The notes beneath the pieces are model-generated. The model was not told the origin of the DNA, searched no databases, and saw only the letters and a list, made by a program, of their open reading frames with translations. A stretch of DNA of 64,000 nucleotides, from contig JANJGN010000387.1 of assembly GCA_026770705.1 (NCBI GenBank), forward strand, positions 434,001-498,000. The letters run 5' to 3'. The DNA is from Isurus oxyrinchus. Lineage: Eukaryota. Below are positions 5,905 to 48,986 of the stretch, piece by piece. Both the position numbers and the translations under genes were made by a program. The stretch's first letter is position 1. Each line of letters begins with the position of its first letter.

Positions 5905-8129
5905 TCATCTTTTAAATAATTTAACAAGCAGGTTCAATGGGATTTTCACACCATTCTTTAACTCTACTCTGAATTTACTCTGGGTCCCTGCATAAATAAA
6001 CGGATTGACGCAAGAACTCAGGAGCTGAAGCATACGTGCACTTTCCTCCATAAGAAAATTTGATTCATTGAAATTGGTAGAGTCTACATAGCTAAGATTC
6101 GCAATTCGGACATAGAGGAAGTTTATAAGTCTTAACAAATGTAACAGGATGAAACTGCCCGAGATACAGAAGAGCAAAACCATGGATTTCCTTCTCTTCT
6201 GCATCTCTGGGTCACTTTGATTCTCTCCATTGCTCTGGATCTGGAGTCTCCTGCGGGTTCGACTGGCCGCTACAATGTGTCTGATGGTCAGAGCATTGAG
6301 CAGTAAAATAAGGAAGAAGGAGAGGCAAGGGGTTAAAACGGCGATTATGCTTTCATAAGCGACCCATTCAGGTGCCGTATAAAATATTGATTTTGAATTG
6401 CATTGCCAGGGTATATTGTCAATGATAAAGGCAGGCTTACACATAAAATACAAAGGGATGCTTTTAACGCAGTTAAGTACAGAGACAGTTGCTATCACCG
6501 CAGCCGCCATTTTCTCAGTGCAATATTTAATTTTCAGCTTCTGGCAGCAAATGGCTACAAATCGGTCAAAGGTGAAAGCCACTGTTACCCAGACAGAACA
6601 ATCGATGACTCCATAATTTAGCACAAGTCTGAGGCTGAAGACCGGAGTGATGGCCAGGAGACTGAACAGGAAATAAATACCTATAATCCAGTTTAATATC
6701 ACAACTGTGATCCCGACAAGAAGATACATCACGGCCATGGACATCAAGTAGTAAGTGATACATTTGGAGAGACCGCATCTTCCTCGAGTCAGTATCACAA
6801 TCACGACCAGATTAGCTGTGACAGCGAAACGCAGCCAGCGAATAGCCAATTTTGAGAAAGAAATTTAGAACATAAAATGTTGGAAATTCTCAGTCAGGCA
6901 GCAGTTGAAAAGAGAGGAACAAGTTAGCATGTCAGAAAGATGATCTGGAGGAAAATATCTTAAAACACAGCAATCTGTTCTGTACTGTCAGCAACACTAA
7001 GGGCTAACTCAAGGTGAACATTGAACGTCCTGCATTGTGACCCTGAAATACAATCAATGTTGTTCTCATTCAACATTTAGAGATGGGAAAATATAAGAAT
7101 ACTCTGAAACATTGGAAAATCGAAGATTAACAAATACATTATAGAACTTGAAAAAAGTTCAGCAAAAAAAAAAAACACTACTTAACTGAAAAGAAGATGA
7201 AGGAGATGTGATGCATCTGAGCTGTAACAATTCGAAGTTAAAGGAACAAGGCTTCACAGCCACGAGTAGAGCTGATCATGCTTACTATGGCTCAGTTTAC
7301 AGCAATCTCACTTTTGAGTCAAAAGGTTTAGCATTCAAGCCCAACTGTTGGACTTCAGCAACGTTGCACTGCCCGATATGCTATATTTCAGCTAAAGCAA
7401 AAGACTGAGGACCGGTCATGAATACAAAATCTTACTTAAGAAATAGCTGTTATTCACATTCCAGCACAAGGAGAAATATATGCACACGGCAAAGTGAGGT
7501 AATTCAACAGCTGTGTCAATAACACCATAGAGCTACATTTACAGCATGATAAATCATCCATGGTGACAGTGTCAATAATACAATTGATTTACATTGCACT
7601 GTGATATTAGTGTGCTTAATACTCCGCCCACGTTAATAATGACAATAACAACATCAAATTACGTTTAGACTGAGAGGCGGCACTGCTAAGTTGGGAGAAA
7701 AGTTTTAGTTAAAGAGATGGAACGGCATTGGCGAAGCAAACATAGTAATCCCTGAAATGGAAGTAAGTATAGTGGCAATGGGAAGAAACTGTTCTCGTGA
7801 AGGGGAGAAATTGTAGCCTTAAAGTGGAGAAAAGAGACCAGTAATGACCAGCAATATTGCAAGGAAAGGGAAGGTTTAATCTCATTTAAAAGAAGAATGC
7901 ACTAAACGTGGAGATAAGGATACTGCAAAAAAGGGAAAACATAAAAAAACAAATTATCCTGTTAATGGGGTGAACCATAGAGAAGCAGTACAGCTAAATT
8001 AAAGAAGTGATAGAGTGAAAAATGATTCTGGTAACTGGTAACTAACCGTAATACTTTACCTGGAATACCGATAGCTGCAAGAACGGGATAGTAAATGGCG
8101 AACACCAGACCTTTTGGTATCCCATGCAT
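5905..8129 (-). CDS. Class A GPCR, GPR139/GPR142-like (paralog 1); exon 1 8129-8060, exon 2 6815-5905; ~326 aa
   Basis: Exon 1 MHGIPKGLVFAIYYPVLAAIGIP, donor CCAG|GTAAAG, acceptor CACAG|CT. Seven hydrophobic segments, FTFDRFVAIC, NPFIY, open to stop. Alternative ATG at 8138. Confidence 0.92.
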
Positions 8130-8180
8130 TTCTCTCATAAGCTCCAAGTGCGCTCTGTGCTACACCGAAAGACTTTTAGA

Positions 8181-8242
8181 TTTATACATGATGTCGGACT
8201 CTAGGGAGACAATGAGAAGGTTTGGCTTTTTACATTAATTAC
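8181..8242 (-). promoter_or_regulatory. Promoter of GPCR 1: homeodomain site GTAATTAATG (8242-8233), O/E-like TCTCCCTAGAG (8209-8199), TATAAA (8186-8181)
   Basis: Motifs and spacing conserved in the other two paralog promoters. Confidence 0.7.
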
Positions 8243-8459
8243 ACTAACTGAAAAAAACATTTTAGTGCAGCTGCTGCCACGCTCGCATTTATATTTTTGA
8301 TGGAATTGAATCTGTTTTCAAGGACACTGGCGCGGCTCCAAATTGAAATAATCAGACAGGAGAGTACGGTCCAAGTTGCATTTTTTCCTAAAATTTAACT
8401 AACAAGCCAAATAAGCCATTGTAATTGTGAAAGTGAGCACTGTGCACGAGCATCCATGG

Positions 8460-8571
8460 CTTTAAACTCTGCAGGAAAACATTACAAAATTCTCACTCTT
8501 GATCATTTTTCGTCCACGTCTTTAAACTCCGCAGGAAAACATTACAAAGTTCTCACTCTTGATCATTTTTC
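8460..8571. repeat. 60-bp-period tandem duplication
   Basis: CTTTAAACTCYGCAGGAAAACATTACAAARTTCTCACTCTTGATCATTTTTC occurs at 8460 and 8520. Confidence 0.9.
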
Positions 8572-9099
8572 AGCCCGTGTGAACACGGATCACGTGTAAC
8601 GTGGCTCCCTTTCCCTTCTGGAATGCGTAACCAATCAGTAGCCATCCATCATTAGCCTCTCTGCCTGCTTGGACGTCAACTCATGACGAAAAGTGTCTCA
8701 ATTAACTCTGTAAATGAAACACCAATGCTATCGGTATTGGCTTGTGTCCTATTTCTGTTTGGCTTTCAGATGGATTTGTAGCAGAATTATTGATCCAGTC
8801 CCACTCAGGCACCTCCATCACACTTTTGCCGGGTATATTCATGACCAGATCAGTATTGATCTCGTTCAACCGCTGAACTGGAAAATGAGGTTACGTTTGC
8901 GTTGGAATGTAACCCTCCCCATGCCCTTACTTGCTCCATGTTTGAAATTTATATTTTCTTCTGCCACTTTGATGTGGACACATTGGGGAATTGGCTATGG
9001 CCCAATATTCAACAGAAGCTCACCAACAACCAGCTGTCTTGAATACACATCCATGCACATCTTTTACTGGAAAGGAACTTTTCCGTTCTCTCAGAATCT

Positions 9100-10215
9100 C
9101 AGTTTCTGCTGAATATGTTCGATTATCCCTTCTAGCTTTCTCTAATAGAGTTTCCAATTACTTCAGCCGAGTATTTCCAGCTCACCGTGGTTGACAGAAC
9201 CCAGCGTCATGCATGTAACATGTCTCACACTTCTGCTTTCACACCTTCTCCCCCTCCAGGATCCACAATAGGCTTCTCCTTGCCCTTGCATACCATTCCA
9301 CACATCTCTTGTATCATTTGGTCCACCTCTGCATTTTCAAACTCATCCGGCATGTTGTCACTGCCCAATATGCCCAACTCACTTCTACTCTTTAACATTG
9401 AGAATGGGTCTTTGCTCCACTCCGCACTTGTCTTCTCCAAAATCAATCCAACTTTTCCTTTTCCGAAGAACCTTCCCATGCACGCAATGAACATGCAACG
9501 CCAGCCCCTGTCTCCATGCCCTTCTCTCTGTCCTACGGCCCAAACAATGCTTCTAAATGGAAAATCGATTTGTTTGAACTTCTGTCCATTGAGTATACCC
9601 TGTTCACTGCTCAATATTCCGTCTGCTCTACATTCTGGATGTTAAATGTAGATTGGTGATAATTTCTCAGGTACATCCATTCGGTCCAGAAGTGTGAACG
9701 TCTGGTCACTTGTCAACCTAATTATCTGTTCCGCTCTCACTTTGACATGACTGTGATTGAACCCTCCTACTGCTCCAAGGAAATGGAACCTGTGCTCCAG
9801 GAGTAAAATCTCATATTTCCTTAAGGCACTTTCTAGGCTTTTGGATTTTCCATAAATTTCAACAATCGTGATCACACCCACTGCATTTTTCTTCCTTCTT
9901 TGCTCTTTGTTATTGCGTTGCGAAAACATTTCTTGATTTTGATTCTGTTATAAACAGTTTGCCATCTTTTAGACATTCCTCTTCTGCTTTTCCTTGTTCC
10001 ACTTTGACTTCCACCATCACTGCTTTTGTCATTTGATTTCTCCTGTTTTCCCATTTACCAGAAGCATCTCCTTTTGAACCTTTTCCCCCCAAATCCGTTT
10101 TTTGCCTCTACACTTGCATTAAAACTGTTCCATCTGTAACTTTTGACTGATTTGATGAAAGGTCACATGCTGCCGGATATCCTGAGTATTTCCATTGTTT
10201 CCTGTTTAATTCCAT
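9100..10215 (+). mobile_element. Penelope-like element relic (GIY-YIG end and terminal repeat)
   Basis: Decayed GIY-YIG-type coding region (~9600-9870), followed by a terminus resembling ...GATGAAAGGTCA...CCTGAGTATTTCCA. Confidence 0.6.
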
Positions 10216-11429
10216 TCAGGATGTTTACATTCAGTGTAGAAATGTGCAGCTCGGCATGGTTATATTCACAGTGCGCACGCCTGGTTTGGCACAGTTACTT
10301 CCATTGTGGACTAGTTCAATTCAGTTAGTGTAGCCATGTCAATCCCGGCAATAACGAAAGTGCACAGGTGTGTGAATTTACATTTTGTGTGGCAAGATCC
10401 AGTTCAGGACGTGTGTGCTTCGTGCTTTCAGTCTAAGCTCAGTGCTCTCACATTCAGAGAAGATAACCTCCTGTTGAGCATGATTAAATTAATGATGGAG
10501 TGCTCCAAATCAACATGGTTATATGCCATGTAGAAATTCCTGTTCAGCTCGTTAGCAATCACTGTTTAGTGGAAAACCAGTTTAGGAGATTATCACGCTG
10601 GTGTGACTGTCCAGTTCAGTAAATTGCATTCACTGCATTCAGGTTAAATTGTGCACAGCTCCACTCAGTACGAACAGGCCAATTTCTATCCTGTTACACT
10701 AAATGTACATGGACGACTTTTTGCCCGATTATTGTCAACTTTGTCCAGTGGAACACAACTACGTACAATGTGCACAGCCCCGGCTGAGAGCACATTCTTT
10801 CTTGCAGTGGAAAATTTCACTTCAGCGTGAATACATTCCATATAGAATAATCAATTTCATTACTGCTATATTCGATGGAGACAGGACTGGCCGAGCATGG
10901 TTATGTTTCGTGTAGATTTATGAAAGTCTGCTCGGTGTTAATAAATGTGTACATGGACATTTGCATTCAGACTGGACTGGTTTAGTTCTGCATTCTTACT
11001 TTTAATTTGACCTTCTGTGGTTCACTGTGGTGGACAGTCCCAATGGATCACTGTGAACCTTTTAATTTCCCAGCAGCTATGCTTCGTGTGCAGGTGTCTT
11101 GACCAGCGAGGTTACATTCAATTTGCGTAATTGCAGTTCTGTAGCATGATTTTCAGTGCAGACTGATCTCGGCCGGAGAGATTTTATTCATTGTGATTTT
11201 CCACAACAAAATCCAGGTCTATTGTTAATGATAAAGGAAGGTTCATAGGCAAAGTACCAGGGGATGAGGAGGTTCTGGAGACTTTGGAATTGTCTTCTCC
11301 AGAAAACAAAAGACGGCAGGGGCACTAAATATATTCAAGGCATAGTTAGACAAATTATTGATCGACAAGATTTCCAATGGTTACTCAGTCTGACAGGAAA
11401 ACGGAGTTAAGGCCAGGATTACATTAATC

Positions 11430-12290
11430 ATGAACTCCGATGGGTATCACACAGCGTTGACAACAAAATGCATCTTAGGAGAATTGAATGGAGCAGTTAA
11501 CAGCAGCAACAGAGTTAAAAGTGCTCTTCATAACAGTTAATCGATTGCAACTATTTGATAAATTTACGAATAAACATGTGGAGGGTAAACAAAAATATGG
11601 AAAAATACATACCACTATCATTTACAGTTTCACGCCAATTAGAAAATATGCTGATCTGTAATGGTTAAGCTCAAATCGCCACAAAAAACACCCTCCCACA
11701 AATTATATTCCTTCTCCCACAGTTTGCTCTTTCAGTTATCCAACAACAATCCTTCGCAATGTCCTCTTCTTATCTAAAATATTTACTGTATCACATGGCT
11801 TATTTTTGGCAGCACTTTGGATACAAAACTTACTGTTGCTTCATTTTGAACCTTCTAAATGCTGTGAAAAGTTGAGACCCAAATACAAATCTTGCGAATC
11901 AGCTGTCACCCCCTGTCAATTGAACTGTATTCACATTACCGATCAACAAATTAAATGAGCTTTGTACATATCACAGCCATCGCGCGTTAAATTTATGTCG
12001 ATATCACTTTAAATTAACATCTAGGCATGTAAAATAAATGACCTGTTTAACTAAGAAATTCTGGTTTTAATGACATTATTGAAGTAACAATTAAACTACA
12101 TTGTGCAGCATTTGTATCATTTCCAAAACGTCCGTCAACACAAGACACAGAAATCGCGGACATACATAAAACAATCTTGAATGTTTTGCTGTTGGAGGAC
12201 AGCCAAACATCCGGAGAAGCTACACAGTAAACATCTGACCCTCAAGGCTTCACAGTTGAACAAAGATTGAAAGGACTTAATTCCGGAAAA
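11430..12290. repeat. ~860-bp direct duplication of 13310-14200
   Basis: Colinear similarity, e.g. AATAAACATGTGGMGGGTAAACAAAAATATGG and GTAAACATCTGACCCTCAAGG in both copies. Confidence 0.92.
11613..11890 (-). pseudogene. Duplicated Ig-like domain pseudo-exon (copy B)
   Basis: AAG|AT acceptor and G|GTATG donor, 278 nt. Reads DLYLGLNFSQHLEGSK*SNSKFCIQ...KPCDTV...FVGGCFLW with stops and a frameshift. Confidence 0.55.
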
Positions 12291-12416
12291 AGAAACGTAG
12301 AATTCAGATTCAGAATGTTTCCGTTTCGTATTTTGAGTGGCTCAGAAAACTGACTGGAAAATAAACAGCCGTAAACCGGCTTAATATCAGTGTAATGATA
12401 ATAACATGGAGATCTG

Positions 12417-13798
12417 TCACCGCCATGGACTCTGCGTATCTGCAAAGACCACATCTTCCTCGGGAACGGATCACGATAGTCAGCTAGTTAGCTGTAAGGG
12501 AGAGAGCGAGAGAGAGAGAGAGAGAGAGAGAAAGGAGAGAGAAGGGAAAAATTAGTGCTGGAACTCCCAGCTACAACATCCGTTTGGCATGTGGACCATC
12601 AATACTTCATTCAACGCTGAACTGATTAATTTGCCAATGTATTAATGCTAGTCCATTTTTTATTTATATTGTCCCAAATAAAGTGGAAGTCGGAATATAA
12701 AATGACACAAAACACTTACTTTCCGTTTCATGTAAATTTTATGTAATCTAGAAATAGAGGGATTTGATCTTCACTAACGTATTAAATTGACATAAGGACA
12801 ACCTGAAAATGGCATTAAAATACAGGTCAAAGCTCAATACATTTATTCATTTATAAATACAGTAAATAATAACGTTATGAAACGTTAAACCGCTATAATA
12901 ATGAAACCAATCGAATGACAGGAAAGAAGTTATGGGTAATAACGGATTCCTATTAAATATCAGAAGGAACCAAGGTACGATGAAAAAGAAAATTTGAGCG
13001 AACACCATTGATTCAATTTGGGCTTTGCCTTTGTGGAAACTAGTCAAAGCGCATCAAAGGCTTTTTTTCAGTTCAGTGACTGCTGTAGTGGCAGATTAGG
13101 TCTCGCAGCAGTAGTGAGGATCTTCAACTGATAAAGCAGAAAGACCTCGGTCTAGAGCCTCGTCAGAAGGACGACAGAGTAGAATTCCTCAGGGGCATGG
13201 AGCTGGGCTACAGACACGCAATCGGAAGTAGGGGACAAACACAGGGCTTTCCGAACGAACACTGAGATTTCAAAATTTAGCTCAGCGAAGTAATGTGGCT
13301 ACGAGTATAATGAATTCCGGCTCCGAAGGGTATCACACAGCCTTGAAAACAAAGTGCACTTCTAAGGAGAATTGAATGCGACTGTTAACCGCAGCAACGG
13401 AGTTAAAAATAGTGGTCATCACGGGTCATCGACTGCAATGATTGCTGTTAAAGTTACGCATTGCAAATCGAACACCAATAAACATGTGGCGGGTAAACAA
13501 AAATATGGAAAATACTTACCACTATCATTTATAGTTTCACGTTAATTAGAAAATATGGTGACGTGCAATGGCTAAACATAAAGCGCCAGAGAAAAACACC
13601 CTTCCACAAATTGTATTCTTTCTCCCACAGTTTGCTCATTCACTTATCCAACAACAACCCTTCGCAATGTCCTGTCCTTCTGTAAACTATTTACTGTACC
13701 ACATGGCTTATTTTCGGCAGCAATTTGGATTCGAAACTTTCTGTTGCTTCATTTTGATCCTTCTAAATGCGGTGAAAAGCTGAGGCCCACATACAAAT
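12417..13798 (-). pseudogene. Type I membrane receptor pseudogene: Ig-like exon 13798-13520, stalk+TM exon 13127-12944, micro-exon 12747-12720, terminal exon 12491-12417 with ITIM-like relic
   Basis: Consecutive AG/GT-bounded exons with compatible phases (1,2,0). TM IESMVFAQIFFFIVPWFLLIF, basic LHKIYMKRK, tail LTS*LS*SVPEEDVVFADTQSPWR*. Several in-frame stops. Confidence 0.6.
12500..12545. repeat. (GA)n microsatellite, forming the minus-strand polypyrimidine tract of the acceptor at 12492-12493
   Basis: Direct observation. Confidence 0.9.
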
Positions 13799-17615: not shown

Positions 17616-19579
17616 CGCCATTTTTGTTAATGGTTTGTCGAAATCATTCATGTGAATGGCGCTGTGCTTCAATAAGAGCTTCGTGGTATCTTTGTAATGT
17701 TTCCCTGTCCTTCCCTGGAACGTTGGCCACTTAAGTGATGGAAAATTTAGAGCATGTGGTGTGGGGTCGATTTCCTCGGGGCATGAGCATGAATTTGAAA
17801 TAAATATAGTTCATTGCAGTATTAATGGAGAGCTGTGCTGATTGTAGTTCGGGCAATCGGGTGGCATCTAAAACTTAAGCCAGTTTCACGATCCCAGGTG
17901 GATGCAAGAAACATCATGTGGAGAATTTGGCTTGGAGGCGCTTTATATGAATTAAAAATATCCCTATTTTTGTCCGTAGCTTCGGTCACATTGAGCAAAA
18001 CCCTGTTGCTGTGGACTGTGCGTTGACCCAAGTAATTTATTAATACTGAAATATACACAGAAGTATCGGAGTGCATGTGCTTAAAAGTACAAAGATTGGT
18101 CAAAGGGGAATATGATATTCTAACGATAATAGAAACTGCCACAATATGTGGGGTGATTGAAAGTTTCATATTCCTGTTTGCAATGCATTTTTGAATCATT
18201 CTTTTTAACTTTTTGCAAACTAAAGTTCTCTCACCTTCCCACTGTTCTGCGAGTGATGGAACATCCCAGGTAGTGTGGCAGCTCAAGTGTGATTTATCAG
18301 CTCCCAGCAGTTGGGTTATGTGTTTGATATGAGGAAGACATTCTTACTAGGACTGCAATATTGTCTCCACTCAATACAGATACCACCTTTTCAATTTATC
18401 ACTGCAATATGGCCCTAGGTGGCAAGCTCAATCTTTATTGCGCATTGCTAATTTTCTTTAGAATTTCGTGGTTAGCTGCTTTCTTGAGCCCCTTCAGTCC
18501 ATGTGCGCTATCTTCATCCATAATACTGCAAGGCAGGAAGTTTCACAGTTTGACCAAGTGATGAAAAATATTTTCAAGTTTCGAGCGTGAGTGAAATGCA
18601 GCTGCTGGTGTTTCCATGTGCCTGTTACCTTTGTTTTCCAAGACAGTAAAACCCGGACTTTGGAAGGTGCAGTTGCAGAATACTGATAACTTGATTGTTT
18701 TGCCCCATGGGATGTGGGCATCGCGTAGAAGGCCATATTTGTTATCAATTTGAGCGCAGTTATGAGGCAGACATTTTACTGTGGGTCTGCAGCCACATGT
18801 AGGCCAGATCGGGTAAGGACGGCACATTGTCTTCCCTAAAGGACTGTTGTGAAGCAGATGGGTGTTTGTAACAAACGATGACCGTTTTTTGTGGGCACAG
18901 TTACTGAGACGAGCTTGATAATCTAGTCGCATTAAATGAATTAGCTGCCATGTTATGATTTAAAACAAAGTCACAAAGATATGTGCCTCGGCCTCAGGAT
19001 CACCCTATCACTCTGCCCCGAATGTTGACATGGGGGTTCGACTATCGCAATTACATTAAATTCCAAGGGAAAGTTGTTTGAAGTCCTCATCATTGAATTG
19101 GTAACATTCTGCTCTATCCTTCCTGAATACATTCGGCATACCTGGATCTCTTGATACAGATTAGAATCACAAAATACTGTTCATTGTCGTGATAAACATA
19201 TAATACTGCTGAAAAAGACCAGTCCAGAATAGTAGATATTGCTCACAACTGGACCTGCACACACTGAATGTAACCGTGCTGAAGTAGCAATGTGCACATT
19301 AAACCTAACTACGATGATTTTAAGGAGGTCTCATTGCTTGCAATACTGATGATTTGGGATTTTTAACATTGAATCTAATGAGGTTGAACTGGAGCAGCCC
19401 ACGCCAGAAGTAACAGTGTATAACTGAACCAGTCCTCTTTGAACACTGGTGTCAAGAAATGAGATGTGGACGTTGAGAATTACTGTGCAGACCTGAGTCA
19501 TTTCACACTCATTATGGACCAGCAGGCCCCATCTTTGTGGAAAACAATCATACAAAATTGAGCATTTCACACTTGAAGG

Positions 19580-21205: not shown

Positions 21206-21245
<40 letters not shown>

Positions 21246-22150: not shown

Positions 22151-23092
22151 TTTGGTGGATAATTTTTTCCGGACACTGAAAGAAAGTATGAGGAATTAAC
22201 TATCTGTGCAAGATTTATAACACTGCTTCACATGTGCACATTGAAGATAGCAGTTAAAATGGGGCCTGTCCATATTCATTGCAAGATGACTGAACTGGGC
22301 CTTTGCAGACTTAGTGCAGCCGTGCATAATCTGGCCTGGCGCCACGGAAAGCGATTTACGGGAAAAGGACGTGCACACTTACCCTTCCTTATCCGTCATG
22401 AACTAATGTAACGTGGCAGAAATGGAGCCTCGACACATCACATAACCATACCGAACTGGAACGGTCCACATTAACTAGAATCGTGCTCAACTGGACCTCC
22501 GTTTACGGAGTTTAAGCGTACTCTCTATAATAATGCATAATTAACGCATAAGCGCCTGATTGCATCTGACCAAGTAAAACGTAGCCGTTCACAGCTACAC
22601 AGCTATGCACACTCACTACAGCTGGATTTGACATGTCTGCAATGAATTTAACTGATGTGGAATAATCTACACTGCAAGAAGCCGTACAGAAGATTTGAGT
22701 ACTTTAAAGCTAAATAAAGGTGATGAGTTGAACATTTCCATACCAAATGCGAACAGAATGAGACAAAAAATGCTGGAAATACACAATAGACCGTTCAGCA
22801 TCTGTGCAGAGAAAACGGTAAAAGGTTCAGATCCATGACTTTACATCGAAATTGGGGAATAGGTAGCAATGGAAGAGTTTTTGTTTTCACTATAACGGCG
22901 GGAAACGGTTGTGATAAAGGGCTGATGATAAACAAACATCAATGTAGGTTTGTGTTAATGTGGAAGACAGAAGGGCACTTTGTGAGGATGTTCCTCCAGA
23001 ACAATGTCAGTGACCTTGAAGAGCTTTCTACTCCGTCAAAACAAAAATAATTTCCCGTCAGCTGCAGCACGAGCATCTTTCTTTCAATTAGC

Positions 23093-23155
23093 GTAATTAT
23101 TGCAAAAGATCAAAGCGTCTAACTGTCTCCCTGGAGGCTGGCGTGAGATATATAT
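23093..23155 (+). promoter_or_regulatory. Promoter of GPCR 2: GTAATTATTG (23093), O/E-like TCTCCCTGGAG (23126), TATATAT (23149)
   Basis: Same offsets (33, 23, and 57 bp to ATG) as GPCR 1. Confidence 0.7.
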
Positions 23156-23205
23156 GTGACTGTCTTTAGTTGTGGTGCAGAACACACTCGCAGCTGGTGA
23201 CAGAA

Positions 23206-25574
23206 ATGCACGGATTGCCAAAAGGTCTTATTTTCATCATATATTATCCCGTCATTGCAGCGATCGGGATTCCAGGTTAAGTATTTTGGTTTGCTATGCT
23301 ATTGAAATCATTGTTTAATCACTTCTCTTTGGTTTGCTTTCATTTTAGTGAATCATTGTTCGTATTTAGGAGCTTTGCTTCTACATGGTACGATATTCTT
23401 TCTCCCATTAAACAGGACAATCTATCAACATTACGGCGACATCGTCCCAATTTATCACGCTAGACAATGTCACTTTTTTCCACTTCAAGGGAAATGCTTA
23501 ATTTAATTCTCCATTTTAGCAACAAAATTGTTTTCTTTTACTGACATGATTAGTCGTCATCACATGTCGAGTCGCTCAAGTTTGTCTGTGCCATTTCTTC
23601 CCTTGAACATAGTTTCTCCCCAATGCAAGAATAATATTTCAGCAGTAACAATGAACTATCTTCCCTGAGCTAGTAACATTTAGTCAGTTTAATTGGACAC
23701 TTTCATCTGTTTACCGCCACCGATCGAGGTTTTAGATGTTCTTTTATTTTATTCTTGGTATTTTTAAAAAGCGTAATGTATAACGCTGTTACCACTGAGG
23801 AAATGTTTTTCTATTGTTTCAATGGCATTGTCACCGTCGGTGAATTATTATAGAGGAACTGTATCTGTATTATGCATTATCTCATTCTTTTCCCTTTAAC
23901 CTTTCGTTGGAATATGAACAGTATTTATCTGATAAATCTGTGCAGAATATTAAATGACTGGCCTAGGGTTTCTTGCCTTAACGGAATCCTGGCACCCTGG
24001 GCGGCGAAGAATTCTCAGGGAGCTGAAGTTGGGCTTGAATCCAGGACATTTTGACTCTAAAGTTTGACGTCTTTCAACTTAACAGCAACTGAACCTTAAA
24101 CTGTGTGTGGATTTCCACCCTGCTGTGAAGGACAGTTGTGTTCGCTGCACGTCATCATAACTCAGGAGTGCTAGTTACCCTTTATTTCCTTCCAAAGGAG
24201 TTTTTTCTTTCCATTTTAGCTGTTCTCATTTGCTGGATTATGCCCACAAGAGTAACACTTTGTACTTAATTCCATTCAACGCCATCTACTCAGTTTCTGT
24301 CAAATTATTAGGTCGATTTAACATTGTGTACCTTTCTTTTTCCAATGTCCTAGCCTGTTCTTCTCTAAACAGCAAGCAAGCGGATACTTGATCGTTTTTC
24401 ATTTAACTGAGTAACAACGCAGCAATTTGAATATTCACTATAGGGCTGAGCCCGCATTCCTCCTGTAAATCAGCACAGTATTGACAACTTGCTGCATTTT
24501 GGAAAGAGTCTTTCTTTCTCCACTGGAGCATATAAGTCATAGGACTGAAATGGGAACATTGCTCTCTTTTCATGACCAATGCTGTATTTGTGAGTTTCTC
24601 AACATTTTCTGTTCTATATTCATTTGTCCCCACCGCAAACTTACTGGTTATATTCCTCTGTCACAGCTAATTTGGCAGTAATTGTGATCCTGTCTCGAGG
24701 AAGATGCGGTCTCACTGGATGTATCACATACTACCTGATGTCCATGGCCGTGACGGATCTCCTGATCATGATCCTTGCTGTGATGTTAAACCGGATTGTA
24801 GGTACATATTTCCCGTTCAGTTTCCTCTCCATCACTCCGGCCTTTGCTCTTAGTCTTGTGTTCATATATGGCGTCAGGGATTCTTCTGTCTGGGTGACAG
24901 TTGCTTTCACCTTTGATCGATTTGTAGCCATTTGTTGTCAGAAGCTGAAAACCAAATATTGCACCAAGAAATCGGCAGCTGTGGTCATAGGAACTGTCTG
25001 CGTTGTGCATTGTGCTAAAAAAATACCCTTGTACTTTGCTTGTGAACCTTCTGTTATCACGGACAATACACCCTGGTACTGCAAACTGAAGCCAATATAT
25101 TATTTGTCACCCGGATGGGTGGCATATGACAGCATAAATGCCGTTTTAACCCCTTGTCTCCCATTCGTTCTTATTTTGCTGCTCAATGTTCTGACGGTCA
25201 GGCACATTGTTGTGGCCAGTCGAGCCCGCAGAAGACTCCGAGCGCACAGCAAGAGCGAGAAACAAAGCGACCCAGAGATGGAGAAGAGGAGAAAGTCCAT
25301 CGTTTTACTCTTTGCCATCTCGGGAAGTTTCATCCTGTTATATTTCCTCGCTCTTATAACTTTCCTCTACGCACGAATTGCCAGCGTTAGTTATTTCGAT
25401 GGCTCGAATTTCAATCAATCAAATGTTATACTGGAGGAATGCGGACTTATGCTGCAGCTTTTAAGTTCCTGCATCAACCCCTTTATTTATGCAGGTACCC
25501 AGAGTAAATTCAGAGAGGAGTTAAAGAATGGTGTGAAATATCCATTGAGTCTGATTGTTAATTTTTTTAAATGA
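23206..25574 (+). CDS. Class A GPCR, GPR139/GPR142-like (paralog 2); exon 1 23206-23275, exon 2 24667-25574; ~325 aa
   Basis: Exon 1 MHGLPKGLIFIIYYPVIAAIGIP, donor CCAG|GTTAAG, acceptor CACAG|CT. Motifs MAVTDL, FTFDRFVAIC, NPFIY; intact frame. Confidence 0.93.
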
Positions 25575-26546
25575 TGAAAGCAGTGAAATCCAACATGAAT
25601 TCTACATTATACCCCACCCATTGCTGTTGCTGTACATGTTACATATGGCTTCAACCCGCAGAAACAGAGTTACCTCCTGCCCGAGGTGTGAATTCAGAAT
25701 TATATAACTAACTCTGCATTTTCCCAGTTAGTTTTTATTTTTTGTCCCCTTTCCAGAGCGGGCCTGGTACATTCCCAACTGTCCCTAAGGTCCCGGGGTG
25801 TCTCGACGTTCATGTAGGAGACAAAGTATCCGACAAAAATGTATAACTTGGCAACAAAGTTTCACTATTAAGTGTAGGAACCTTGCTATCTCCCCTTCCT
25901 ATGTTTTGGAACTTGATGGTAGATGGCGCCCTGAAATGGAAACGGACACTGTCCCCACCCATTGATCTATATTGAGCAGTCTCCGCTTCACACTTGAACT
26001 CTTTTTCCCATAAACATAGCAAGAGGGAACTGGAATATTACAGACACAGATAAAGGAAACATTTTGTTCGCCTCTTCCATTTGGCAATGGAGGGGAAATC
26101 CGCAGAGTCATCATACAGTACAAGTTACACTGGCAACAATCTCCCCTTTTAAATGATTACAAATCGCAACTGGCCAGAACAAAAAAAAACAAATTTAATG
26201 GAAACATTATCTTCACCATCCACAATGCATTATAAAAGTTTATTGCCATCCTGATACAGAAACAGTAATTAGAATGGAATTGTGGGTTACGCTTCACAAT
26301 GACCCCCTATCCCAATCGTGGATAAATACTACACACTTGCTGTTATTTGGAATTTCCCGTGTCGTGACTTACAACCACACCGAAAGTCTCAAGACTCAGC
26401 ATTGATCTCAGCAGAAAATCCAATCCAAGGCATTCATGCTGTGTACATATTATCATTTGTTATGTCTTCCGATGTTAATTGAAACAAACCGATTGCTCTG
26501 CACTTTATAAGGGATTTGTCTAAAGGATTAAGTAGCAGAAAAATGC

Positions 26547-26944: not shown

Positions 26945-28330
26945 GAGTCCCACGTCAGTGGTCCGGAAACTATTGGAGAAAATTCTGAAGGAAAGAATCT
27001 ACCTTAACTTGGAGAGAGAAGGTTTGATAAGAGATATTCAGCATTGATTCTTCAGAGATAAGTCATGCCTAAAAGATTTGCCTGAATTTTTGAGGAGGTG
27101 ACCAGGTGTGTACATGGAGGTAGTGCAGTTGATGTAGTTAATATGGATTTCAGAAAAGCCTTTGACAAGGTCCCATATGGCAGCCTTATAAATAAGGCAA
27201 ATACACATGGGATACAGGGTAATTTGAAAAGGTGGATTATAAATTGGCTTAGTTGTAGGAGACAGAATGTAATTATAGAAGGCTGCTTTGGTGACTGAAA
27301 ACCCGAGTCCTGTGGTGTACCACAGAGATCTGTGCTGGGTTGCCTATTATTCGTTATTTATATAAATGACATAGATGACTATGTGGGGAGTAGGAATAGT
27401 AAGTTTGCGGATGACACAAAGATTGGCCGGTTGGTTAACAGTGAGGTTGAGAGGCTTGGGCTGGAGGAAGATATCGGCGTGGTGGTCAAATGGGCAGATA
27501 AGTGGCCGATGGAATTTAACACTGAAAAGCGTGAGGTTATACACTTTGGAAGGAGTAATTTGACAAGGAAGTATTCAATGAACGGCATGGCACTAGGAAG
27601 ATCTGAGGAACAAAGGGACCTTGGTGCATGTGTCCATAAGTCTCTGAACGCAGAGGGGCATGATAGTGGGGTGGTGAAAAAGGCATTTGGGACAATTGCC
27701 TTTCTCAATCGAGGCACGATTGCAAAAGTAGAGGGGTCATGTTGGAGTTGTATAGAACGTTGGTGAGACCACAGCTGGAGTGCTCTGTGCAGTTTTGAAC
27801 GCCAAATGATAGGAAGGATGTGATTGTGCTAGAGGCGGTGTAGAGGAAGTACACGTGGATGCAGCCTGGGATGAACCATTTACGTTATAAAGAGTGGTTG
27901 GATAGAGTTGGTTTTTTTCGGCGAAACAGAGAAGACTGAGGAGTGGCCAGTTCAAGGTGTACAAGCTTGTGAGGGGTATTGAAGGGGTGGATAGGGACAG
28001 CTGTTCCCCATAGTCAGAGGCTCAGTCACGAGGGAACACAAGTTCAAGGTGAGGGGCAGGAGGTTTCGTGGGGATGTGAGGGAAAACGTTTTTTACCCAA
28101 GTATTGGGGACGGTCTGGAATGCGCTGCCTGGGACAGTGGTGGAGGTGGGTTGCCTCACATCCTTTATAAAGTGTCTAGATGAATACTTGGCACGTCCTA
28201 ACATTCAAGGTTGTGGGCCAAGTGCTGGTCAACGGGATTAGTTAGGTAGGTCAGGTGTTTCTCACGTGTCAGTACAGGCTCGATGGGCCGAAGGGCCTCT
28301 TCCGCACTGTGCGATCCTTTGATTCTGTGA
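26945..28330 (+). mobile_element. CR1-like LINE, 5'-truncated RT and tail
   Basis: VDVVNMDFRKAFDKVP, LLFVIYINDID, SKFADDTKIG; frameshifted. Confidence 0.92.
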
Positions 28331-31670: not shown

Positions 31671-31699
31671 CAAGGTTTTTTCAAATTTTGTGTCCAGAA

Positions 31700-32090: not shown

Positions 32091-32099
32091 GTGGTAATA

Positions 32100-33260: not shown

Positions 33261-33275
33261 TGTCAAGTTCCCTCA

Positions 33276-39049: not shown

Positions 39050-39260
39050 TGAAAACAGAAAACGCTGGAAATATCAGCAGGTCTGAAAGAATCTGCAGAG
39101 GCAGAAACAGAGTGGTCTTCTCGATTCGGTATGACCCTTCTTCAGCTGAACTCGAAAGGTCAACTCTGTTTCTCTCTCCTCAGATGCTGTCAGGCCTGCT
39201 GAGTTTTTCCAGCAATTTTTGTTTTTGTTTCAGATTTCCAGCATCCGCAGTATTTTGCAT
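39050..39260. mobile_element. Palindromic (tail-to-tail) Penelope terminal repeat; a second one at 39600-39840
   Basis: GCTGGAAATATCAGCAGGTCTG...ATCTG is inverted relative to CAGATGCTGTCAGGCCTGCTGAGTTTTTCCAGC. Confidence 0.75.
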
Positions 39261-40639: not shown

Positions 40640-41640
40640 CGGAACAGAGGAACAGGAGAATGCCATTCAACCCATCGAACCTGTCCCACCTTTCATTGCG
40701 ATCATGGATGATCATCTCCTTCAACATCTTTCACCCACACCATCCTCATACCGTTTATATCTTTGGTATTTAGAAATCTGCCATTCTCTGCTTTAAACAT
40801 ACTCAATGATTATGCTTCGACAGCTCTCCGGGATGCAGAAATACAAACATTCGCAAACCACTGAGTAAAAAACAATTCTCCTCAGGTCAGTCCTAGTGGC
40901 TTTACCCTTATTTTGAAATTGTGTCCCCTGTTTCTAGATTCCCCGACCAGGGGATACATCTGACCTTCATTTACACTTTCTTCCATTCAGGTGTTTTGTT
41001 TGTTATAATGAGATCTTTTTGCTCATGTTTGGAAACTCTGGAGAATACAGGTCCAGTGTCCCCAATCCTTCTTCACAGGACAGTCACGCCATCCCTGATG
41101 CAAGTCTGGTGAGCCTTCGATTCACTCCCTCAATGACAATTACTCCCTTCCGAATGTAAGGGGGGCAAACCTGCACATTGTACCCCAGGGTTGGCCTAAC
41201 CAAGATTATATACAAAGGAAATGAGACTTCATTATGGCTGTATTCAAATCCACTTGTGAGAGAAGCTAACATTATATTCGTCTTCCTAAATGCTTCATAT
41301 GTATGTCAGGTTTCAGAGACCTATTGATGAGGGTACACAGGCCCCCTTGTACAGCTACATTTTCCAGGCTCTCACGTTTTATGAAATAATCTGCACATCT
41401 GTTGATCCTACCAAGCTTGTTAACCTCGCATTCTTCCACGTTAAATTTCATCTTTCCTGTTCTGTCCCCCTCACCAAGTCTGTCCAAATCGCCTTGAAAC
41501 CATTTTTCACCTTCCTCACAATACACGTTCCCACCAAGCTTTGTGTCATCCTCGAACTTGGAAATATTACATTTGGCGCTCATATCCAAATCATTCATAT
41601 GTTGTGAACAGCTGGCTCTCAAGTAGTGAGCCTTCCAATT
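40640..41640 (-). mobile_element. CR1-like LINE RT and tail
   Basis: MNDLD...ISKFEDDTKLGG...QGDLDRL; LVRPTLGYNVQ. Confidence 0.88.
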
Positions 41641-42562
41641 CCCCACTGGCCAGATGCTGACAAAGTTTGATATTTCACTCTATACTCCATCACCCCCACC
41701 ACCCCAACCGCCACAATAGAAAACACACACTTAGGTCGCCGGCGCCCCTCACCCCACACCTCACACTTTGAAATGACATGCTTCAGTTACTGCTGCAGCA
41801 GCAGGAGTCCTTTGGATCACGTAAGAGTGTCACAACACTGATGGAAGCCCTTGAAGCATTAGTCTGTTTCTCGCTACACAAAGGTAGCGAGGGCTGCTGA
41901 TTATTCCCAGCATTGCTGTTTTTTATTTCAGTTCCGAGCACATTGGCCCCTCCTCTCTCTCCTCTCCTGAACATAATTTTTCCAGATGAGTTCAGGGGAC
42001 ATTTGAATTGACGAATTTCACTGGAACATAACTTGTGCAGTGGAAATAATTCTTTATTTGAAACGAGGAGACGTCCCGCTCCAAGATACTGTGACTGTTC
42101 AGCTCTAAAAACACTGGAATAAAATCACAGAAAGATTTTGAAAAGCTGAAATCACTGACTTTCGAACGTCTAAAACCCATCCTCCCATCTGCAGGTTGGT
42201 CCGAAATGTTTTGAACAAGGTTTCCCTGGGATAGTGGAGACACTGCAGCATGTCCGTCCCTGGACTGTAACCTGCACAAGTGGCCTTATCCTCCAAAGCC
42301 CCTCTGGGTAATGACATGGAACTCGAGCCTGGTGGGTGGGAATTTCACACACCAGGCCCAAGGACAACAGGAGAGTTGGAATAGCCTGGAAACCAGCAGG
42401 ACAAACAGGACTGAGGTAAATTACTTCCCAAATGCACCGTTTCTGTTAGTCATTGAATCCTGGCGGTGAAAGATGAAAACTGGCCTCACCCTGTGCTCAT
42501 CACCGAGGTGAAGGGATTGGGAATAAAACAGGGTCAACTCGTATTGATAATGGATATTCTTG

Positions 42563-45500: not shown

Positions 45501-48500
45501 CGCTTGCTTGGTTAGGTGCAGCTCCCAGAACGCTCAAGAAGCTTGACACCATTCAGGGCAATGCACCTCGCTGGATTGGTAGCACATCCAAAAATATTTA
45601 CACACTCCACCACTGTTGCATAGTAGCACCAGTGGGTGCCATCTACAAGATGCACTGCAGGAACTCATCAATGCTCTTTCAGCTGCACGTTCAAACCCCG
45701 ACCACTACCATCTAGAAGGAGAAGGGGAGCAGACAGATGTGAACACCACCAAACGGAAGTTCCCCTTCAAGTCACTCACCATTTTGACCTGGAAATATAT
45801 CGCCGTTCCTTCACTGTCGCTGGGCCAAAATCCTGGAATTCCCTTCAGAACAGCACTCTGGGTGCGCCTACACCCCGAAGACTGTAGCAGTTCAAGAAGG
45901 CAGCTCAGCACCACCTTCACAAAGGCAACTAGTGATGGGTAATAAATTCTGGCCCAGCCAACGAAGCCCATTTCCCATGAATGGATAATAATAGAACATA
46001 TTGCATGCTAGCTTTCTCTAGATTGTGTACCCGAGCACCCAAATTATGAAAATTTACAATTTTTACCAGTTTCTCGACTGTTTAAACGCTGGATGAGGAC
46101 AGAATGAAACTCGTCTGTGTTATTATCTCAGGGAAACTGAAGATTCTGGTGCAATATTAACACAGGGCTTTGATGCGTGTGTAAATTAATATGTAAGATA
46201 ATTCATAAAATTAATGGTCCTGGCCTCCCATTTGGTGGCGATACTCGGATAATCAGTGCTGATTGTAAATGTAATTAAAGCCCTATCTTTTTCCACCCTT
46301 GCAGCTTGTTTTTCTTGCCTACGTAGCGGGGTGGGGGAGATGAGCTGTGTATGAGGTGCGTAGATGGCGGGTGGTCAGCAGTTGGGATGGGGATGGGTAA
46401 GTAGTTAACGTGCTTTGCAGTCAGTTGAGGGTTGAATGGACGGGCGATGGCTAGTGAGAGCTGTGCAAGTGGATCGAGGGGAAGGCAATCGAGTCAGATT
46501 AGGTATTCTGGGGTCAGTAGTTGGGGGTGTTGTGGGTTGTTGTGTGTGGGCTGAATGTGGGAGTTCTGTAGGTGGGGGTTGGGCGTGCATGGGCTTTGCT
46601 TGAAAGTTATTCACTGACACATGCTAGAAATTAATAGCGGGAAAATACTACGCCAAGCATCTGTCACACAACAGGCACAACAGTGCAAAACTGAAGTCAG
46701 TATTGGAGTCATTGTTAGAGGGGCCTGGGCAGTACAAATCTGCCCATCTGAAGTTTAAAGTTCATGGGAAATTACCATGCATGCTCCTGGATCAAGATTT
46801 CCGATGGGTCCTGATATGCAGAGCGGCAGACATTTCAATATTCACCACTGTTGGCATCAGGAGCTCCGGTTAATGATATAGTCAGTATTAATTTCACGGC
46901 AATGGACTCCAGACACCAGCTGCAGATAGAGGGAAATTACACAAGAGCGAAATGGAGATCAGGTCAAAGAAGGCTGGCTTAGGATGAATAACAATAAAGA
47001 ACACATTTTAAGAATTATCTTAAAGGATGGTAAGTTTGTAGCGAGGACAAAGGATTTAGGAGGAAATTCAGAACATGAAACTCTTAATATTTCATTGTGG
47101 TCACCCATGCCAAAGGCTGCAGACATGTCGACAAAAGGGAAGAGAGGCAGCTCGACATTAGCAGAGTCACATAAGATATAATTTGTGCCTTTTCTAAGGA
47201 CGGTATAAGAGTTGTAATAAGGGAGAAAAATGGTTAGAAGGATTTAAGCATGGTGTCCCTGGAAGATGGGGCGGAAACGTGGGGGGTAGCAGCAGGGACA
47301 AGGAATTTGTAGAGGAAAGAGAGCTTAGGGATGGAGTGTTTGCTTACAAGGACTGAGGCAACAGGGGTTGCTTATTTACAAGGGCAGGGGCAATGACTAC
47401 AGAATGGAGCAGCAGAAGAACAGTGGCTAAGCAGATGGAACTATTAACTATATCAGCAACTGAGGAACATGATGAGGAAGTTCGAGGTTCAGCAGTTTGG
47501 TGGCAGTGCGGTGAACCAGTCCCCTCCAGCAGCCACCCCTCCGCCCATACCCTACACCATGCCTCCCACCAGACCAATCAAACGCCTGGAAATCTCACAT
47601 CTGAAACATAATGGAACGCTCACTACTCATCAGTATGGTTATCAGAGCAACACCCAATAAGCAGAATCACCTTCAATAATGGAATAGATTTTCCATCAGT
47701 GTCCGTCCATCATTAAACTTGCTATTTCTCCAGCTCCACCTCTGTGGATACAGGAAGAATGTCTACAGAATCAACTACAACAACACACCGGGGCTACTTC
47801 GACAGCACGTACCAGGACAGCAAAATGCAGAATGTGTGCAATGCCATGAGATTCACCTTCTCTAACGCACCATCCTGACTTGGAATGGTAACATCTCCCT
47901 TCATCAGCGTTCCGGAATTCCCTAACAGCAGGTAGGAGCACAGTCAGCAGAGGGAATACTTCAGCTCAACAAGAAGACTCAGCACCAACTTCTCAGCTCA
48001 CTTCCAGATGGGTAATAAATGGAAGTTTGTCACAAGCATCCATTTCCCAAGGACACATTTTGAAAATAAAAAAAAACTTTGGGAGGGGGATAATGATTTG
48101 CAGCTCTAAATAACGTCATGCAGAGACAAGGGAAGGAAATTAGGTCTGTGGACAGAAATGGGAACGGAACCAATTGTTGGTGAGGGGAGCAAATATTGTT
48201 GAACAATTATTACATTTTAAATTCTCTCCTAAATATCTAAATTTGGTTATTGTTAGGCAAAGCGGGAGATGGTGGAATGGAATTTGCCTGGAGCTGAATT
48301 ATTATGTGAGATCTTCCCTCGTTCCTGTCTGCCCTAATTTCCGCAGATCAGTGCAAATTACTATCTGCATCACACAGCAAACCCAATATCTGCGCAACAT
48401 ATTCTGCTCAGTTATTGGGGTTCAGTTTAAACAGCAGACTGCAGCTGTTCAATAGCTATAATTCACCACTAATATTTATTGCGTAAAATATTTCACCAGC

Positions 48501-48833
48501 CAAATTCTGAAGAAAAAAATCACTTGAAGCAAGTCTTGAGATGTACAAACGGTCCAATGAACTGTGAACAGTGAATCAGCAACTGCTGAAATGCTACTTC
48601 ACAGAAGCACAGGGCATTACATGTCACAGGACACAAGAATTACAGAGAATAAAATTAATTAACTCACGTTAAGGGCAAGGACAACAAACATGGTGAAAGA
48701 TGTTTTATAAAATAAGTTTCTAAAATAATCACTCACCAGGAATGCCAACAGCAGCGAGGAGCGGATAGTAAATCCTTTGCAAATCATAAATCACCCAGAC
48801 AATCCGAAGTTCAGTTGGAATTTCAAAGAACAT
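42563..48833 (-). CDS. Class A GPCR, GPR139/GPR142-like (paralog 3, more divergent); exon 1 48833-48737, exon 2 43464-42563; ~332 aa
   Basis: Exon 1 MFFEIPTELRIVWVIYDLQRIYYPLLAAVGIP, donor CTG|GTGAGT, acceptor TTACAG|TG. Motifs MATADL, KVCN, FTFDRFLAIC, NMAIY; intact. The start codon is less certain. Confidence 0.9.
44765..45990 (+). mobile_element. L2/CR1-superfamily LINE RT and 3' end, inside the GPCR 3 intron
   Basis: LDIKATFGRV, FSCFINDL, MFATDFTMF, LKKLDTIQ, SWNSL. Confidence 0.9.
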
Positions 48834-48925
48834 GATCTCATTTGCTGTGAGATCCAATGATCGCTGTTTATACTGGCAACCACACTCTGTCAAACACTCA
48901 TATACACATTGAAAACATTGCCTAG

Positions 48926-48986
48926 ATATAGGCGGAGGAGAGTCCTGGTGATTCAATTAAACAATACACAGGCTGGCATTAATTAC
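48926..48986 (-). promoter_or_regulatory. Promoter of GPCR 3: GTAATTAATG (48986-48977), O/E-like AATCACCAGGA (from 48953), TATAT (from 48930)
   Basis: Homeodomain 10-mer identical to GPCR 1, with the same 33 and 23 bp offsets. The O/E match is weaker; a second TATAAA lies at 48872-48867. Confidence 0.55.

What the first reader, a model, noticed from the sequence alone, without database searches (positions are those of the whole stretch)
5905..48986. GPR139/142-like receptor cluster with an olfactory-receptor-style promoter: candidate unrecognised chemosensory receptor family
Seen: three intact, diverged paralogs, each preceded by a TAAT homeodomain site, an O/E-like site exactly 33 bp later and a TATA exactly 23 bp after that (8242/8209/8186; 23093/23126/23149; 48986/48953/48930). 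The spacing is kept even in the distant paralog 3. Established: homeodomain (Lhx2) plus O/E (EBF) sites typify vertebrate odorant-receptor promoters; mammalian GPR139 and GPR142 are single-copy aromatic amino acid sensors; sharks smell amino acids but have few classical ORs. Inference: an expanded GPR139/142-like family may act as an extra amino-acid odorant repertoire. EBF is also a B-cell factor, so lymphoid expression is the alternative.
Basis: partly seen in the sequence, partly recalled or inferred. Interest (0 to 1): 0.82.

Follow-up and report, generated by a model that had tools for sequence, protein, structure and literature searches.

The report
Conserved promoter of expanded shark receptors
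Three neighbouring shark genes of a very large, little-studied receptor family share a short, selectively preserved switch region with a homeodomain-type site at a fixed distance from a TATA box, but nothing here shows that it is a smell-receptor switch or that the genes work in the nose.

Summary
The sequence facts hold. All nine coordinates are exact.

The homeodomain-type 10-mer GTAATTAWTG occurs 3 times in 64 kb, expected 0.38. All 3 copies lie in sense, 56 bp before a TATA.

- **G1/G2 promoter:** identity is 67-70% from -200 to -1. It falls to the shuffled baseline (48-50%) further upstream and deep in the intron.
- **G3 promoter:** G3 belongs to a subfamily that split off before sharks and rays parted. 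It keeps the same register.
- **"O/E" label:** weak. G1/G2 match TCCCNNGGGA with 2 mismatches, a quality seen once per 360 bp. G3 has 3 mismatches.
- **Family:** hundreds of members per elasmobranch genome. Related genes were found in coelacanth, salamanders and teleosts. Similarity to GPR139 is distant, 63 bits.
- **Variation:** it sits in the extracellular halves of the protein, as in ligand-diverse repertoires.
- **Expression:** no RNA evidence could be obtained.
- **Other genomes:** their DNA was out of reach.

This scan noted the same family and promoter before on other pieces of this genome. An olfactory role remains an untested hypothesis, about 0.2.

The parts
5905..6815 (-). G1 coding exon 2 (TM1 end to stop)
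   Evidence: ORF; 7tm_1 E 4.9e-15; acceptor AG 6817-6816 read; tblastn to P0001 70% id
8060..8129 (-). G1 coding exon 1 (MHGIPKGLVF..., 70 nt, phase-1 donor GT 8059-8058)
   Evidence: matches the N-termini of homologs
8130..8329 (-). G1 promoter block conserved with G2: homeodomain site 8233-8242, conserved 13-mer TGTCTCCCTAGAG 8199-8211, TATAAAT 8180-8186
11197..12492 (-). Remnant of a fourth family member: fragments 12492-12340 (aa 24-78) and 11265-11197 (aa 143-165), no exon 1 or promoter relic found
   Evidence: tblastn E 6e-11 and 3e-6; relic search
23006..23205 (+). G2 promoter block: homeodomain site 23093-23102 (preceded by CAATTAG on 23085-23091), conserved 13-mer TGTCTCCCTGGAG 23124-23136, TATATAT 23149-23155
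23206..23275 (+). G2 coding exon 1 (MHGLPKGLIF..., donor GT 23276-23277)
24667..25574 (+). G2 coding exon 2
   Evidence: 74% id to P0001
42563..43464 (-). G3 coding exon 2 (subfamily B)
   Evidence: 78% id to P0123
48737..48833 (-). G3 coding exon 1 (MFFEIPTELRIVW..., 97 nt, donor GT 48736-48735)
   Evidence: N-terminus matches P0123/P0124
48834..49000 (-). G3 promoter: homeodomain site 48977-48986, second TAATTG 48954-48959, block at the O/E position 48942-48951 (TCACCAGGAC, 3 mismatches), TATATC 48925-48930

Best explanation
The window holds part of a tandem birth-and-death cluster of an elasmobranch-expanded orphan class A GPCR family. Public annotation auto-names the family 'probable GPR139', but it is a separate old clade.

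Each gene has two coding exons. About 200 bp directly 5' of exon 1 forms a compact TATA promoter inherited from the common ancestor of the paralogs and kept by purifying selection. Its most constrained feature is a TAATTA-type homeodomain site held exactly 56 bp upstream of the TATA box.

Inferred mechanism: a Q50 homeodomain factor bound at this site, together with whatever binds the downstream conserved block, recruits or stabilises the TATA-dependent initiation complex. This restricts expression to one cell type. Transcription is predicted to start about 25-30 nt after the TATA, giving a 5'UTR of about 27 nt in G1/G2 and about 67 nt in G3.

The receptors pair a conserved intracellular face with variable extracellular halves. 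They therefore most likely form a ligand-diverse repertoire feeding one signalling route, which is chemosensory-like in the broad sense.

Shown: gene structures, the conservation footprint, the shared register, family size and the variability pattern. Inferred: factor identity, start site, cell type and ligand class. The tissue is unknown.
For: - **Gene models:**
- **Footprint, G1 vs G2:** identity is 48-50% at -600..-201, which equals the shuffled 50.4 +/- 2.9. It is 66.7% at -200..-114, 69.9% at -113..-1 and 78.6% in exon 1, then 49-50% in the intron beyond +170. Exon 2 gives dS 0.60 and dN/dS 0.29.
- **Homeodomain site:** the exact 10-mer occurs 3 times in the window, expected 0.38, and only at the three promoters.
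- **Shared register:** the composite pattern is found 3 times against 0.00 expected, though it was built post hoc from these three. G3 keeps the register, with 260 of 127,680 windows scoring as high.
- **Age:** G3 lies in clade B (support 100) and G1/G2 in clade A (96). Each clade holds a ray as well as sharks, so the split predates the shark-ray divergence.
- **Family size:** 2254 and 1565 hits. By my count of the listings, about 80 of the best 120 and about 49 of the best 120 are from Heterodontus francisci alone.
- **Variability:** mean column entropy is 1.4-2.0 bits in the extracellular halves and 0.7-0.9 bits in the intracellular ones.
Against: - No transcript evidence of any kind. No listed run is on record as RNA, and the four holders are DNA. 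The start site and even transcription itself are therefore inferred.
- Only three promoters, two of them close paralogs, could be examined.
- At >=80% likeness, paralog contigs pile up on exon 2 but hardly on the promoter and exon 1 of G2. The promoter as a whole is thus not highly conserved across many copies; only short elements could be.
- One contig in each of X2, X3 and X4 matches both flanks of the module but not 23047-23176. This is unexplained.
- G1 lacks the TM2 Asp and may be decaying.
Confidence: 0.7

Rival explanations
1. The family is an extra odorant receptor repertoire of the shark nose, perhaps for amino acids. Genes are chosen in olfactory neurons through Lhx2-type and O/E (Ebf) sites, as in odorant receptor promoters.
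For: [quoted passage not shown]
- G1/G2 carry a conserved TCCC..G.G block at the right place.
- G3 has TAATTG 2 nt before the block, a juxtaposition that recalls the Lhx2/Ebf composite.
- The family is large, clustered and varies in the pocket half.
- Catshark has only a few OR, TAAR and V1R genes (PMC11979771 and PMC10116579, passages).
Against: - The O/E match is no better than chance density, and it fails in G3.
- Rigid spacing is a Greek Island feature, not an OR promoter feature.
- Cartilaginous fishes seem to lack ciliated OSNs, and ORs are not expressed in the catshark nose.
- The 50 most specific 'brain & olfactory epithelium' genes of catshark included no GPCR (PMC11979771, passage). 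Its supplementary tables could not be opened.
- Similarity to GPR139 is too distant to carry ligands over.
- No RNA data here.
Confidence: 0.2
2. The same promoter logic, but in a non-nasal cell type. Candidates are taste or solitary chemosensory cells, somatosensory ganglion neurons (as for MRGPRs), hair-cell or ampullary lineages, or enteroendocrine or brain cells. A different homeodomain factor would read TAATTA.
For: - TAATTA is a generic Q50 homeodomain site (recalled knowledge).
- The O/E assignment is unsupported.
- G1 and G2 share a CAGCTG E-box about 30 nt upstream of the homeodomain site (seen in the sequences).
- Published nose data do not point to class A receptors.
- Relatives in coelacanth, salamanders and teleosts suggest an older, non-repertoire function, though only one or a few sequences per species were returned and copy number was not counted.
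Against: No expression data either way. The E-box is one event shared by two close paralogs and is absent from G3.
Confidence: 0.3
3. Lymphoid or other immune expression driven by EBF.
For: Only the O/E-like block in G1/G2.
Against: The O/E match is at chance density and missing in G3. The invariant element is the homeodomain site, which is not a typical B-cell promoter feature (recalled).
Confidence: 0.05
4. The shared module is only residual similarity by descent, with no regulatory role.
For: G1 and G2 are sister paralogs, so some similarity is expected.
Against: - Flanks and intron of G1/G2 have already fallen to the shuffled baseline, while -200..-1 stays at 67-70%.
- G3 split off before the shark-ray divergence, yet keeps the exact 10-mer and the 56-nt distance to TATA.
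Confidence: 0.05

Closest known systems
Mouse odorant receptor promoters (O/E + homeodomain, TATA in a subset)
   Same: AT-rich homeodomain site and a TATA box within about 100 bp of the presumed start; large clustered receptor family (PMC3247239).
   Different: - The O/E element is not established here.
- The first exon is coding. OR genes usually have non-coding 5' exons and one coding exon (recalled).
- Fixed spacing is not an OR promoter trait (PMC5608512).
- No expression evidence.
Greek Island Lhx2/Ebf composite motif (mouse OR enhancers)
   Same: Stereotyped distance between a homeodomain site and a pyrimidine/purine-rich Ebf-like block. G3 has TAATTG, then 2 nt, then TCACCAGGAC.
   Different: - Those are intergenic enhancers, not TATA-proximal promoters.
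- In G1/G2 the proximal homeodomain site is degenerate (TCATTG, TAACTG).
- I could not score the published matrix, because figures and supplements are not held.
GPR139 / GPR142 (aromatic amino-acid-sensing orphan class A receptors)
   Same: GPR139 is the best solved-structure match of the family profile (63 bits, E 2.2e-16; the next, NMUR2, scores 46.6 bits) over the full 7TM length. Public annotation names the family after it.
   Different: - A separate clade: coelacanth, salamander and teleost relatives score 118-217 bits.
- Cys-rich ICL1/ICL2 signatures (RGRCGLSxC, AICCQKLKxKYC), DRF in place of DRY, and a very short N-terminus.
- Ligands unknown.
Lineage-specific class A repertoires co-opted for sensing (TAARs, mouse vomeronasal FPRs, MRGPRs)
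   Same: 7tm_1 receptors expanded in tandem, with variable pocket residues and pseudogenes.
   Different: Here the sensory tissue and ligands are unknown. The comparison with these families is recalled, not tested.

Membership tests
GPR139/GPR142 subfamily | Rhodopsin-class 7TM domain | tested here: met
   PF00001 E 4.9e-15, 2.9e-22 and 8.5e-16 for the three ORFs
GPR139/GPR142 subfamily | GPR139 is the nearest characterised receptor | tested here: met
   Profile vs PDB: GPR139 63 bits, next NMUR2 46.6 bits. With a single sequence, CCKAR (E 2.7e-5) ranked just above GPR139 (E 9.5e-5).
GPR139/GPR142 subfamily | Orthology-level similarity to GPR139 or GPR142 | tested here: not met
   Human GPR139 scores 63 bits. 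Salamander, coelacanth and teleost relatives of this family score 217, 189, 173 and 118 bits. No true GPR139/142 sequences were in the tree.
GPR139/GPR142 subfamily | Activation by aromatic amino acids; conserved pocket residues | not tested
   No assay possible. The pocket halves are the most variable parts of the family.
Odorant-receptor-type promoter | Homeodomain site within about 200 bp of the start | tested here: met
   Exact GTAATTAWTG in 3 of 3 promoters, 3 in the window against 0.38 expected. The start site itself is inferred.
Odorant-receptor-type promoter | O/E (Ebf) site near the start | tested here: inconclusive
   G1/G2 have 2 mismatches to TCCCNNGGGA, a quality seen 178 times in 64 kb (192 expected). 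G3 has 3 mismatches. The block is conserved between G1 and G2.
Odorant-receptor-type promoter | Binding by Lhx2/Ebf and expression in olfactory sensory neurons | not testable with these tools
   No RNA holder among 12 listed runs. Laid runs are DNA contigs.
Chemosensory multigene family (general hallmarks) | Large lineage-specific expansion in tandem clusters with pseudogenes | tested here: met
   (135 representatives at E<=1e-30). Three genes plus one remnant in 64 kb.
Chemosensory multigene family (general hallmarks) | Variation concentrated in the ligand-facing half, signalling face conserved | tested here: met
   Entropy is 1.44-1.99 bits in the extracellular segments and 0.72-0.92 bits in the intracellular ones, over 82 sequences.
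Chemosensory multigene family (general hallmarks) | Sparse, one-receptor-per-cell expression in sensory cells | not testable with these tools
   No RNA data.

The most novel reading that the evidence does not exclude
This family of more than 100 genes is the unrecognised main class A chemoreceptor repertoire of sharks and rays, used in the nose or in another chemosensory epithelium. Its members are selected through a homeodomain-anchored TATA promoter whose register has been kept since before sharks and rays split. If so, homeodomain (plus possibly Ebf-like) receptor-choice logic would be shared with, or have evolved in parallel to, odorant receptor genes.
Probability: 0.2. Interest if true: 0.9.

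Novelty: new variant of a known kind. Interest (0 to 1): 0.55.

Why it matters

By the counts here, this orphan class A family has well over a hundred members per genome. No paper I could search describes it. That makes it an obvious candidate for missing sensory capacity.

The conserved, sharply bounded promoter gives a concrete handle:
- a defined 200-bp element and a single invariant site to mutate;
- a motif to search for genome-wide;
- probes for in situ work.

Even if the genes are not nasal, a promoter register kept across subfamilies older than the shark-ray split is a useful case of regulatory constraint in a fast-evolving gene family.

Tried and rejected
- **DNA of homologs in other shark genomes:** The main refutation test, module enrichment across the family, could therefore not be run.
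- **Metagenome scan with the family profile:** it returned 11 loci, all distant GPCRs at 23-44% identity apart from one 27-residue match at 63%. None was a family member, and they were not used.
- **RNA evidence:** 12 runs were listed and none is on record as RNA. The four holders, laid at 80% likeness, cover intron and intergenic DNA evenly. They are therefore DNA, differing from the window by about 1-4%. They showed paralog pile-up on exon 2 only.
- **Relic of the pseudogene's promoter or exon 1:** none found.
- **Bacterial-type promoter scan:** irrelevant to a vertebrate gene.
- **Pfam on six other ORFs:** 0 of 6 gave a hit, so their reverse-transcriptase look is by eye only.
- **Juxtaposed homeodomain + O/E-like pairs across the window:** 12 observed against 4.6 +/- 2.2 in 30 block shuffles, maximum 11. 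This is a weak excess and I did not interpret it.
- **Reading the rigid spacing as OR-like grammar:** rejected after reading PMC5608512.
- **Carrying amino-acid ligands over from GPR139:** rejected because the similarity is low.
- **Joined spliced protein:** left out. Exon 2 was searched alone, and exon 1 was compared separately.
- **Supplementary files:** the tables of PMC11979771 (tissue expression) and PMC5608512 (motif matrix) may bear on the claims and could not be seen.
Full report
**What is there**

The window is elasmobranch DNA. The best protein matches, at 74-78% identity, are to Heptranchias perlo, Heterodontus francisci and other sharks. The species was not identified.

The window holds three uninterrupted rhodopsin-class receptor ORFs. 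Comparison with full-length homologs shows that each ORF is the second coding exon of a two-exon gene:

| Gene | Strand | Exon 1 | Intron | Exon 2 |
|---|---|---|---|---|
| G1 | - | 8129-8060 | 8059-6816 | 6815-5905 |
| G2 | + | 23206-23275 | 23276-24666 | 24667-25574 |
| G3 | - | 48833-48737 | 48736-43465 | 43464-42563 |

- The intron is in phase 1, at the same place in TM1, in all three.
- G3's exon 1 peptide matches the N-terminus of the Heptranchias model P0123.
- A fourth, decayed copy survives as two fragments on the minus strand, 12492-12340 and 11265-11197.
Exon 2 was searched alone, and exon 1 was compared separately.

**The observation**

The modules lie directly 5' of exon 1. The TATA is 57 nt before the ATG in G1/G2 and 97 nt before it in G3.

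- The 10-mer GTAATTAWTG occurs exactly three times in the 64 kb on both strands, against 0.38 expected. All three are at these promoters, in sense.
- Counting from the G of that 10-mer, all three genes have a second homeodomain-like hexamer at 27-32. It reads TCATTG, TAACTG and TAATTG.
- All three have a block at 35-44, reading TCCCTAGAGT, TCCCTGGAGG and TCACCAGGAC.
- All three have TATA at 56. TATA has a per-position frequency of 0.004.
- The composite pattern built from the three is found only there even with one mismatch allowed, against 0.00 expected. It is post hoc.

A fairer test aligns G3 without gaps to G1 and G2 at offsets 10-85. This gives 30/75 and 29/75 identities. Only 260 of 127,680 windows score as high, and G3 is the best of the 64 other TAATTA-anchored windows.

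**Is it selected?**

G1 and G2 are sister paralogs, with dS 0.60 and dN/dS 0.29 in exon 2. Under one global alignment scheme their identity runs as follows:

| Region, relative to the ATG | Identity |
|---|---|
| -600..-201 | 48-50% |
| -200..-114 | 66.7% |
| -113..-1 | 69.9% |
| Exon 1 | 78.6% |
| First 100 nt of the intron | 58% |
| Deeper intron | 49-50% |
| Shuffled pairs (baseline) | 50.4 +/- 2.9% |

So a sharply bounded block of about 200 bp is conserved, while neighbouring non-coding DNA has been randomised.

G3 belongs to a different subfamily (clade B, support 100) from G1/G2 (clade A, support 96). Each clade contains a ray as well as sharks, so the split predates the shark-ray divergence. 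That divergence is roughly 270-300 My old by recall. Keeping the exact 10-mer and an indel-free 56 nt to the TATA over that time argues for function.

**The O/E label**

- Against TCCCNNGGGA, G1 and G2 have two mismatches and G3 has three.
- Sites with two or fewer mismatches occur 178 times in the window against 192 expected, one per 360 bp. G3's block is not among them.
- The block TGTCTCCCTRGAG is conserved between G1 and G2 and probably binds something. Calling it an Ebf site is not supported by this evidence.
- Young et al. found relaxed O/E matches about 2.7-3.3-fold enriched in mouse OR promoters. They also found about 240 such matches in 314 shuffled promoters (PMC3247239, passages). 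That shows how common weak matches are.
[quoted passage not shown] Rigid spacing is therefore not an OR promoter hallmark.

**The family**

- G2 finds 2254 proteins and G3 finds 1565 proteins at E<=0.001. By my count of the listings, about 80 and about 49 of the two best-120 lists come from Heterodontus francisci alone.
- A profile of 82 members finds 135 representatives of 50% clusters at E<=1e-30.
- Outside elasmobranchs the nearest full-length hits are from salamanders (217 bits), Latimeria (189), and the teleosts Odontesthes (173) and Engraulis (118).
- Human GPR139 in the PDB scores 63 bits. It is the best solved match, ahead of NMUR2 at 46.6 bits.
- The family is therefore a distinct old gnathostome clade, related to GPR139 only distantly.
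- Its members have a very short N-terminus, Cys-rich ICL1/ICL2 motifs and DRF.
- Column entropy is 1.4-2.0 bits in the extracellular halves and 0.7-0.9 bits in the intracellular ones. This is the pattern of a ligand-diverse repertoire with one signalling interface.
- G1 has Y in place of the TM2 Asp and 10 departures at near-invariant columns; the family median is 4.

**Expression**

None could be shown.

- No listed run is on record as RNA.
- The four holders, laid at 80% likeness, cover intron and intergenic DNA at even single-contig depth. They differ from the window by about 1-4%, so they are DNA.
- Paralog contigs pile up on exon 2 (24578-25649) but hardly on the promoter and exon 1 bins.
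- One contig in each of three runs matches both flanks of the module but not 23047-23176. This is unexplained.

**Literature**

- Searches for GPR139 with shark terms, for GPR139-like names, and for shark GPCR expansions found no description of this family.
- PMC10116579 (passages) reports that cartilaginous fishes seem to lack ciliated OSNs, that nearly all catshark OSNs express Go and TRPC2, and that ORs are not expressed in the nose.
- PMC11979771 (passages) found no GPCR among the 50 most specific 'brain & olfactory epithelium' genes.
- These results lower, but do not exclude, a nasal role.

**Earlier notes of this scan**

- 53 notes describe such clusters and 7 describe the promoter on other pieces of this genome.
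- Two follow-ups reached the same verdict as mine.
- One note gives the layout HD-18-HD-2-O/E-11-TATA for another cluster. G3 fits it if the elements are taken as 8, 6 and 10 nt. I could not see that window.

**Verdict**

This is a real, selectively kept homeodomain-TATA promoter shared by members of a large orphan receptor family that I could not find described. The olfactory-receptor-style reading is a reasonable but untested hypothesis whose O/E leg is weak.

Noticed in passing
window 11197-12492 (-): Remnant of a fourth family member: TM1-TM2 at 12492-12340 and a TM4 piece at 11265-11197, with about 1 kb of extra DNA between them and a (GA)n run at 12500-12542.
   Followed up: partly
window 23047-23176: In DNA runs X2, X3 and X4, one contig each matches both flanks of the G2 promoter module but skips these 130 nt. 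What lies between is not known. It could be a deletion allele or a paralog diverged exactly in the module.
   Followed up: no
window 22702-22835: Depth in the DNA runs rises several-fold just upstream of the G2 promoter block. This is probably a dispersed repeat.
   Followed up: no
window 49238-49256 and 19048-19070: Juxtaposed homeodomain + O/E-like pairs with only one O/E mismatch: CAATTAATTTCTCAGGGGA about 410 bp upstream of the G3 ATG, and CAATTACATTAAATTCCAAGGGAA between G1 and G2. The window-wide excess of such pairs is weak, 12 against 4.6 +/- 2.2.
   Followed up: partly
window 8296-8301 and 23066-23071 (approx.): G1 and G2 share a CAGCTG E-box about 30 nt upstream of the homeodomain site. 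It is not present in G3.
   Followed up: no
proteins P0129-P0137, P0150 (Heptranchias perlo): A clade B subgroup has an N-terminal extension made of 3-5 tandem copies of a 14-residue unit (MGRNLRTIDWNVTT) carrying N-glycosylation sequons. None of the window genes has it.
   Followed up: no
window 27332-27766 (+), 41272-41646 (-): ORFs with an FADDTK/FEDDTK-type motif that looks like reverse-transcriptase debris. The same kind of peptide forms the probably mis-annotated N-termini of public models P0128 and P0138. Pfam gave no hit.
   Followed up: partly
window 8453-8571: A 60-bp unit repeated twice (93% match) about 210-330 bp upstream of the G1 homeodomain site.
   Followed up: no
window 24846-24979: The strongest paralog pile-up in the DNA runs is on the TM3/DRF region of exon 2. 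Many contigs there break off into unlike sequence, as expected for hundreds of diverged copies.
   Followed up: no
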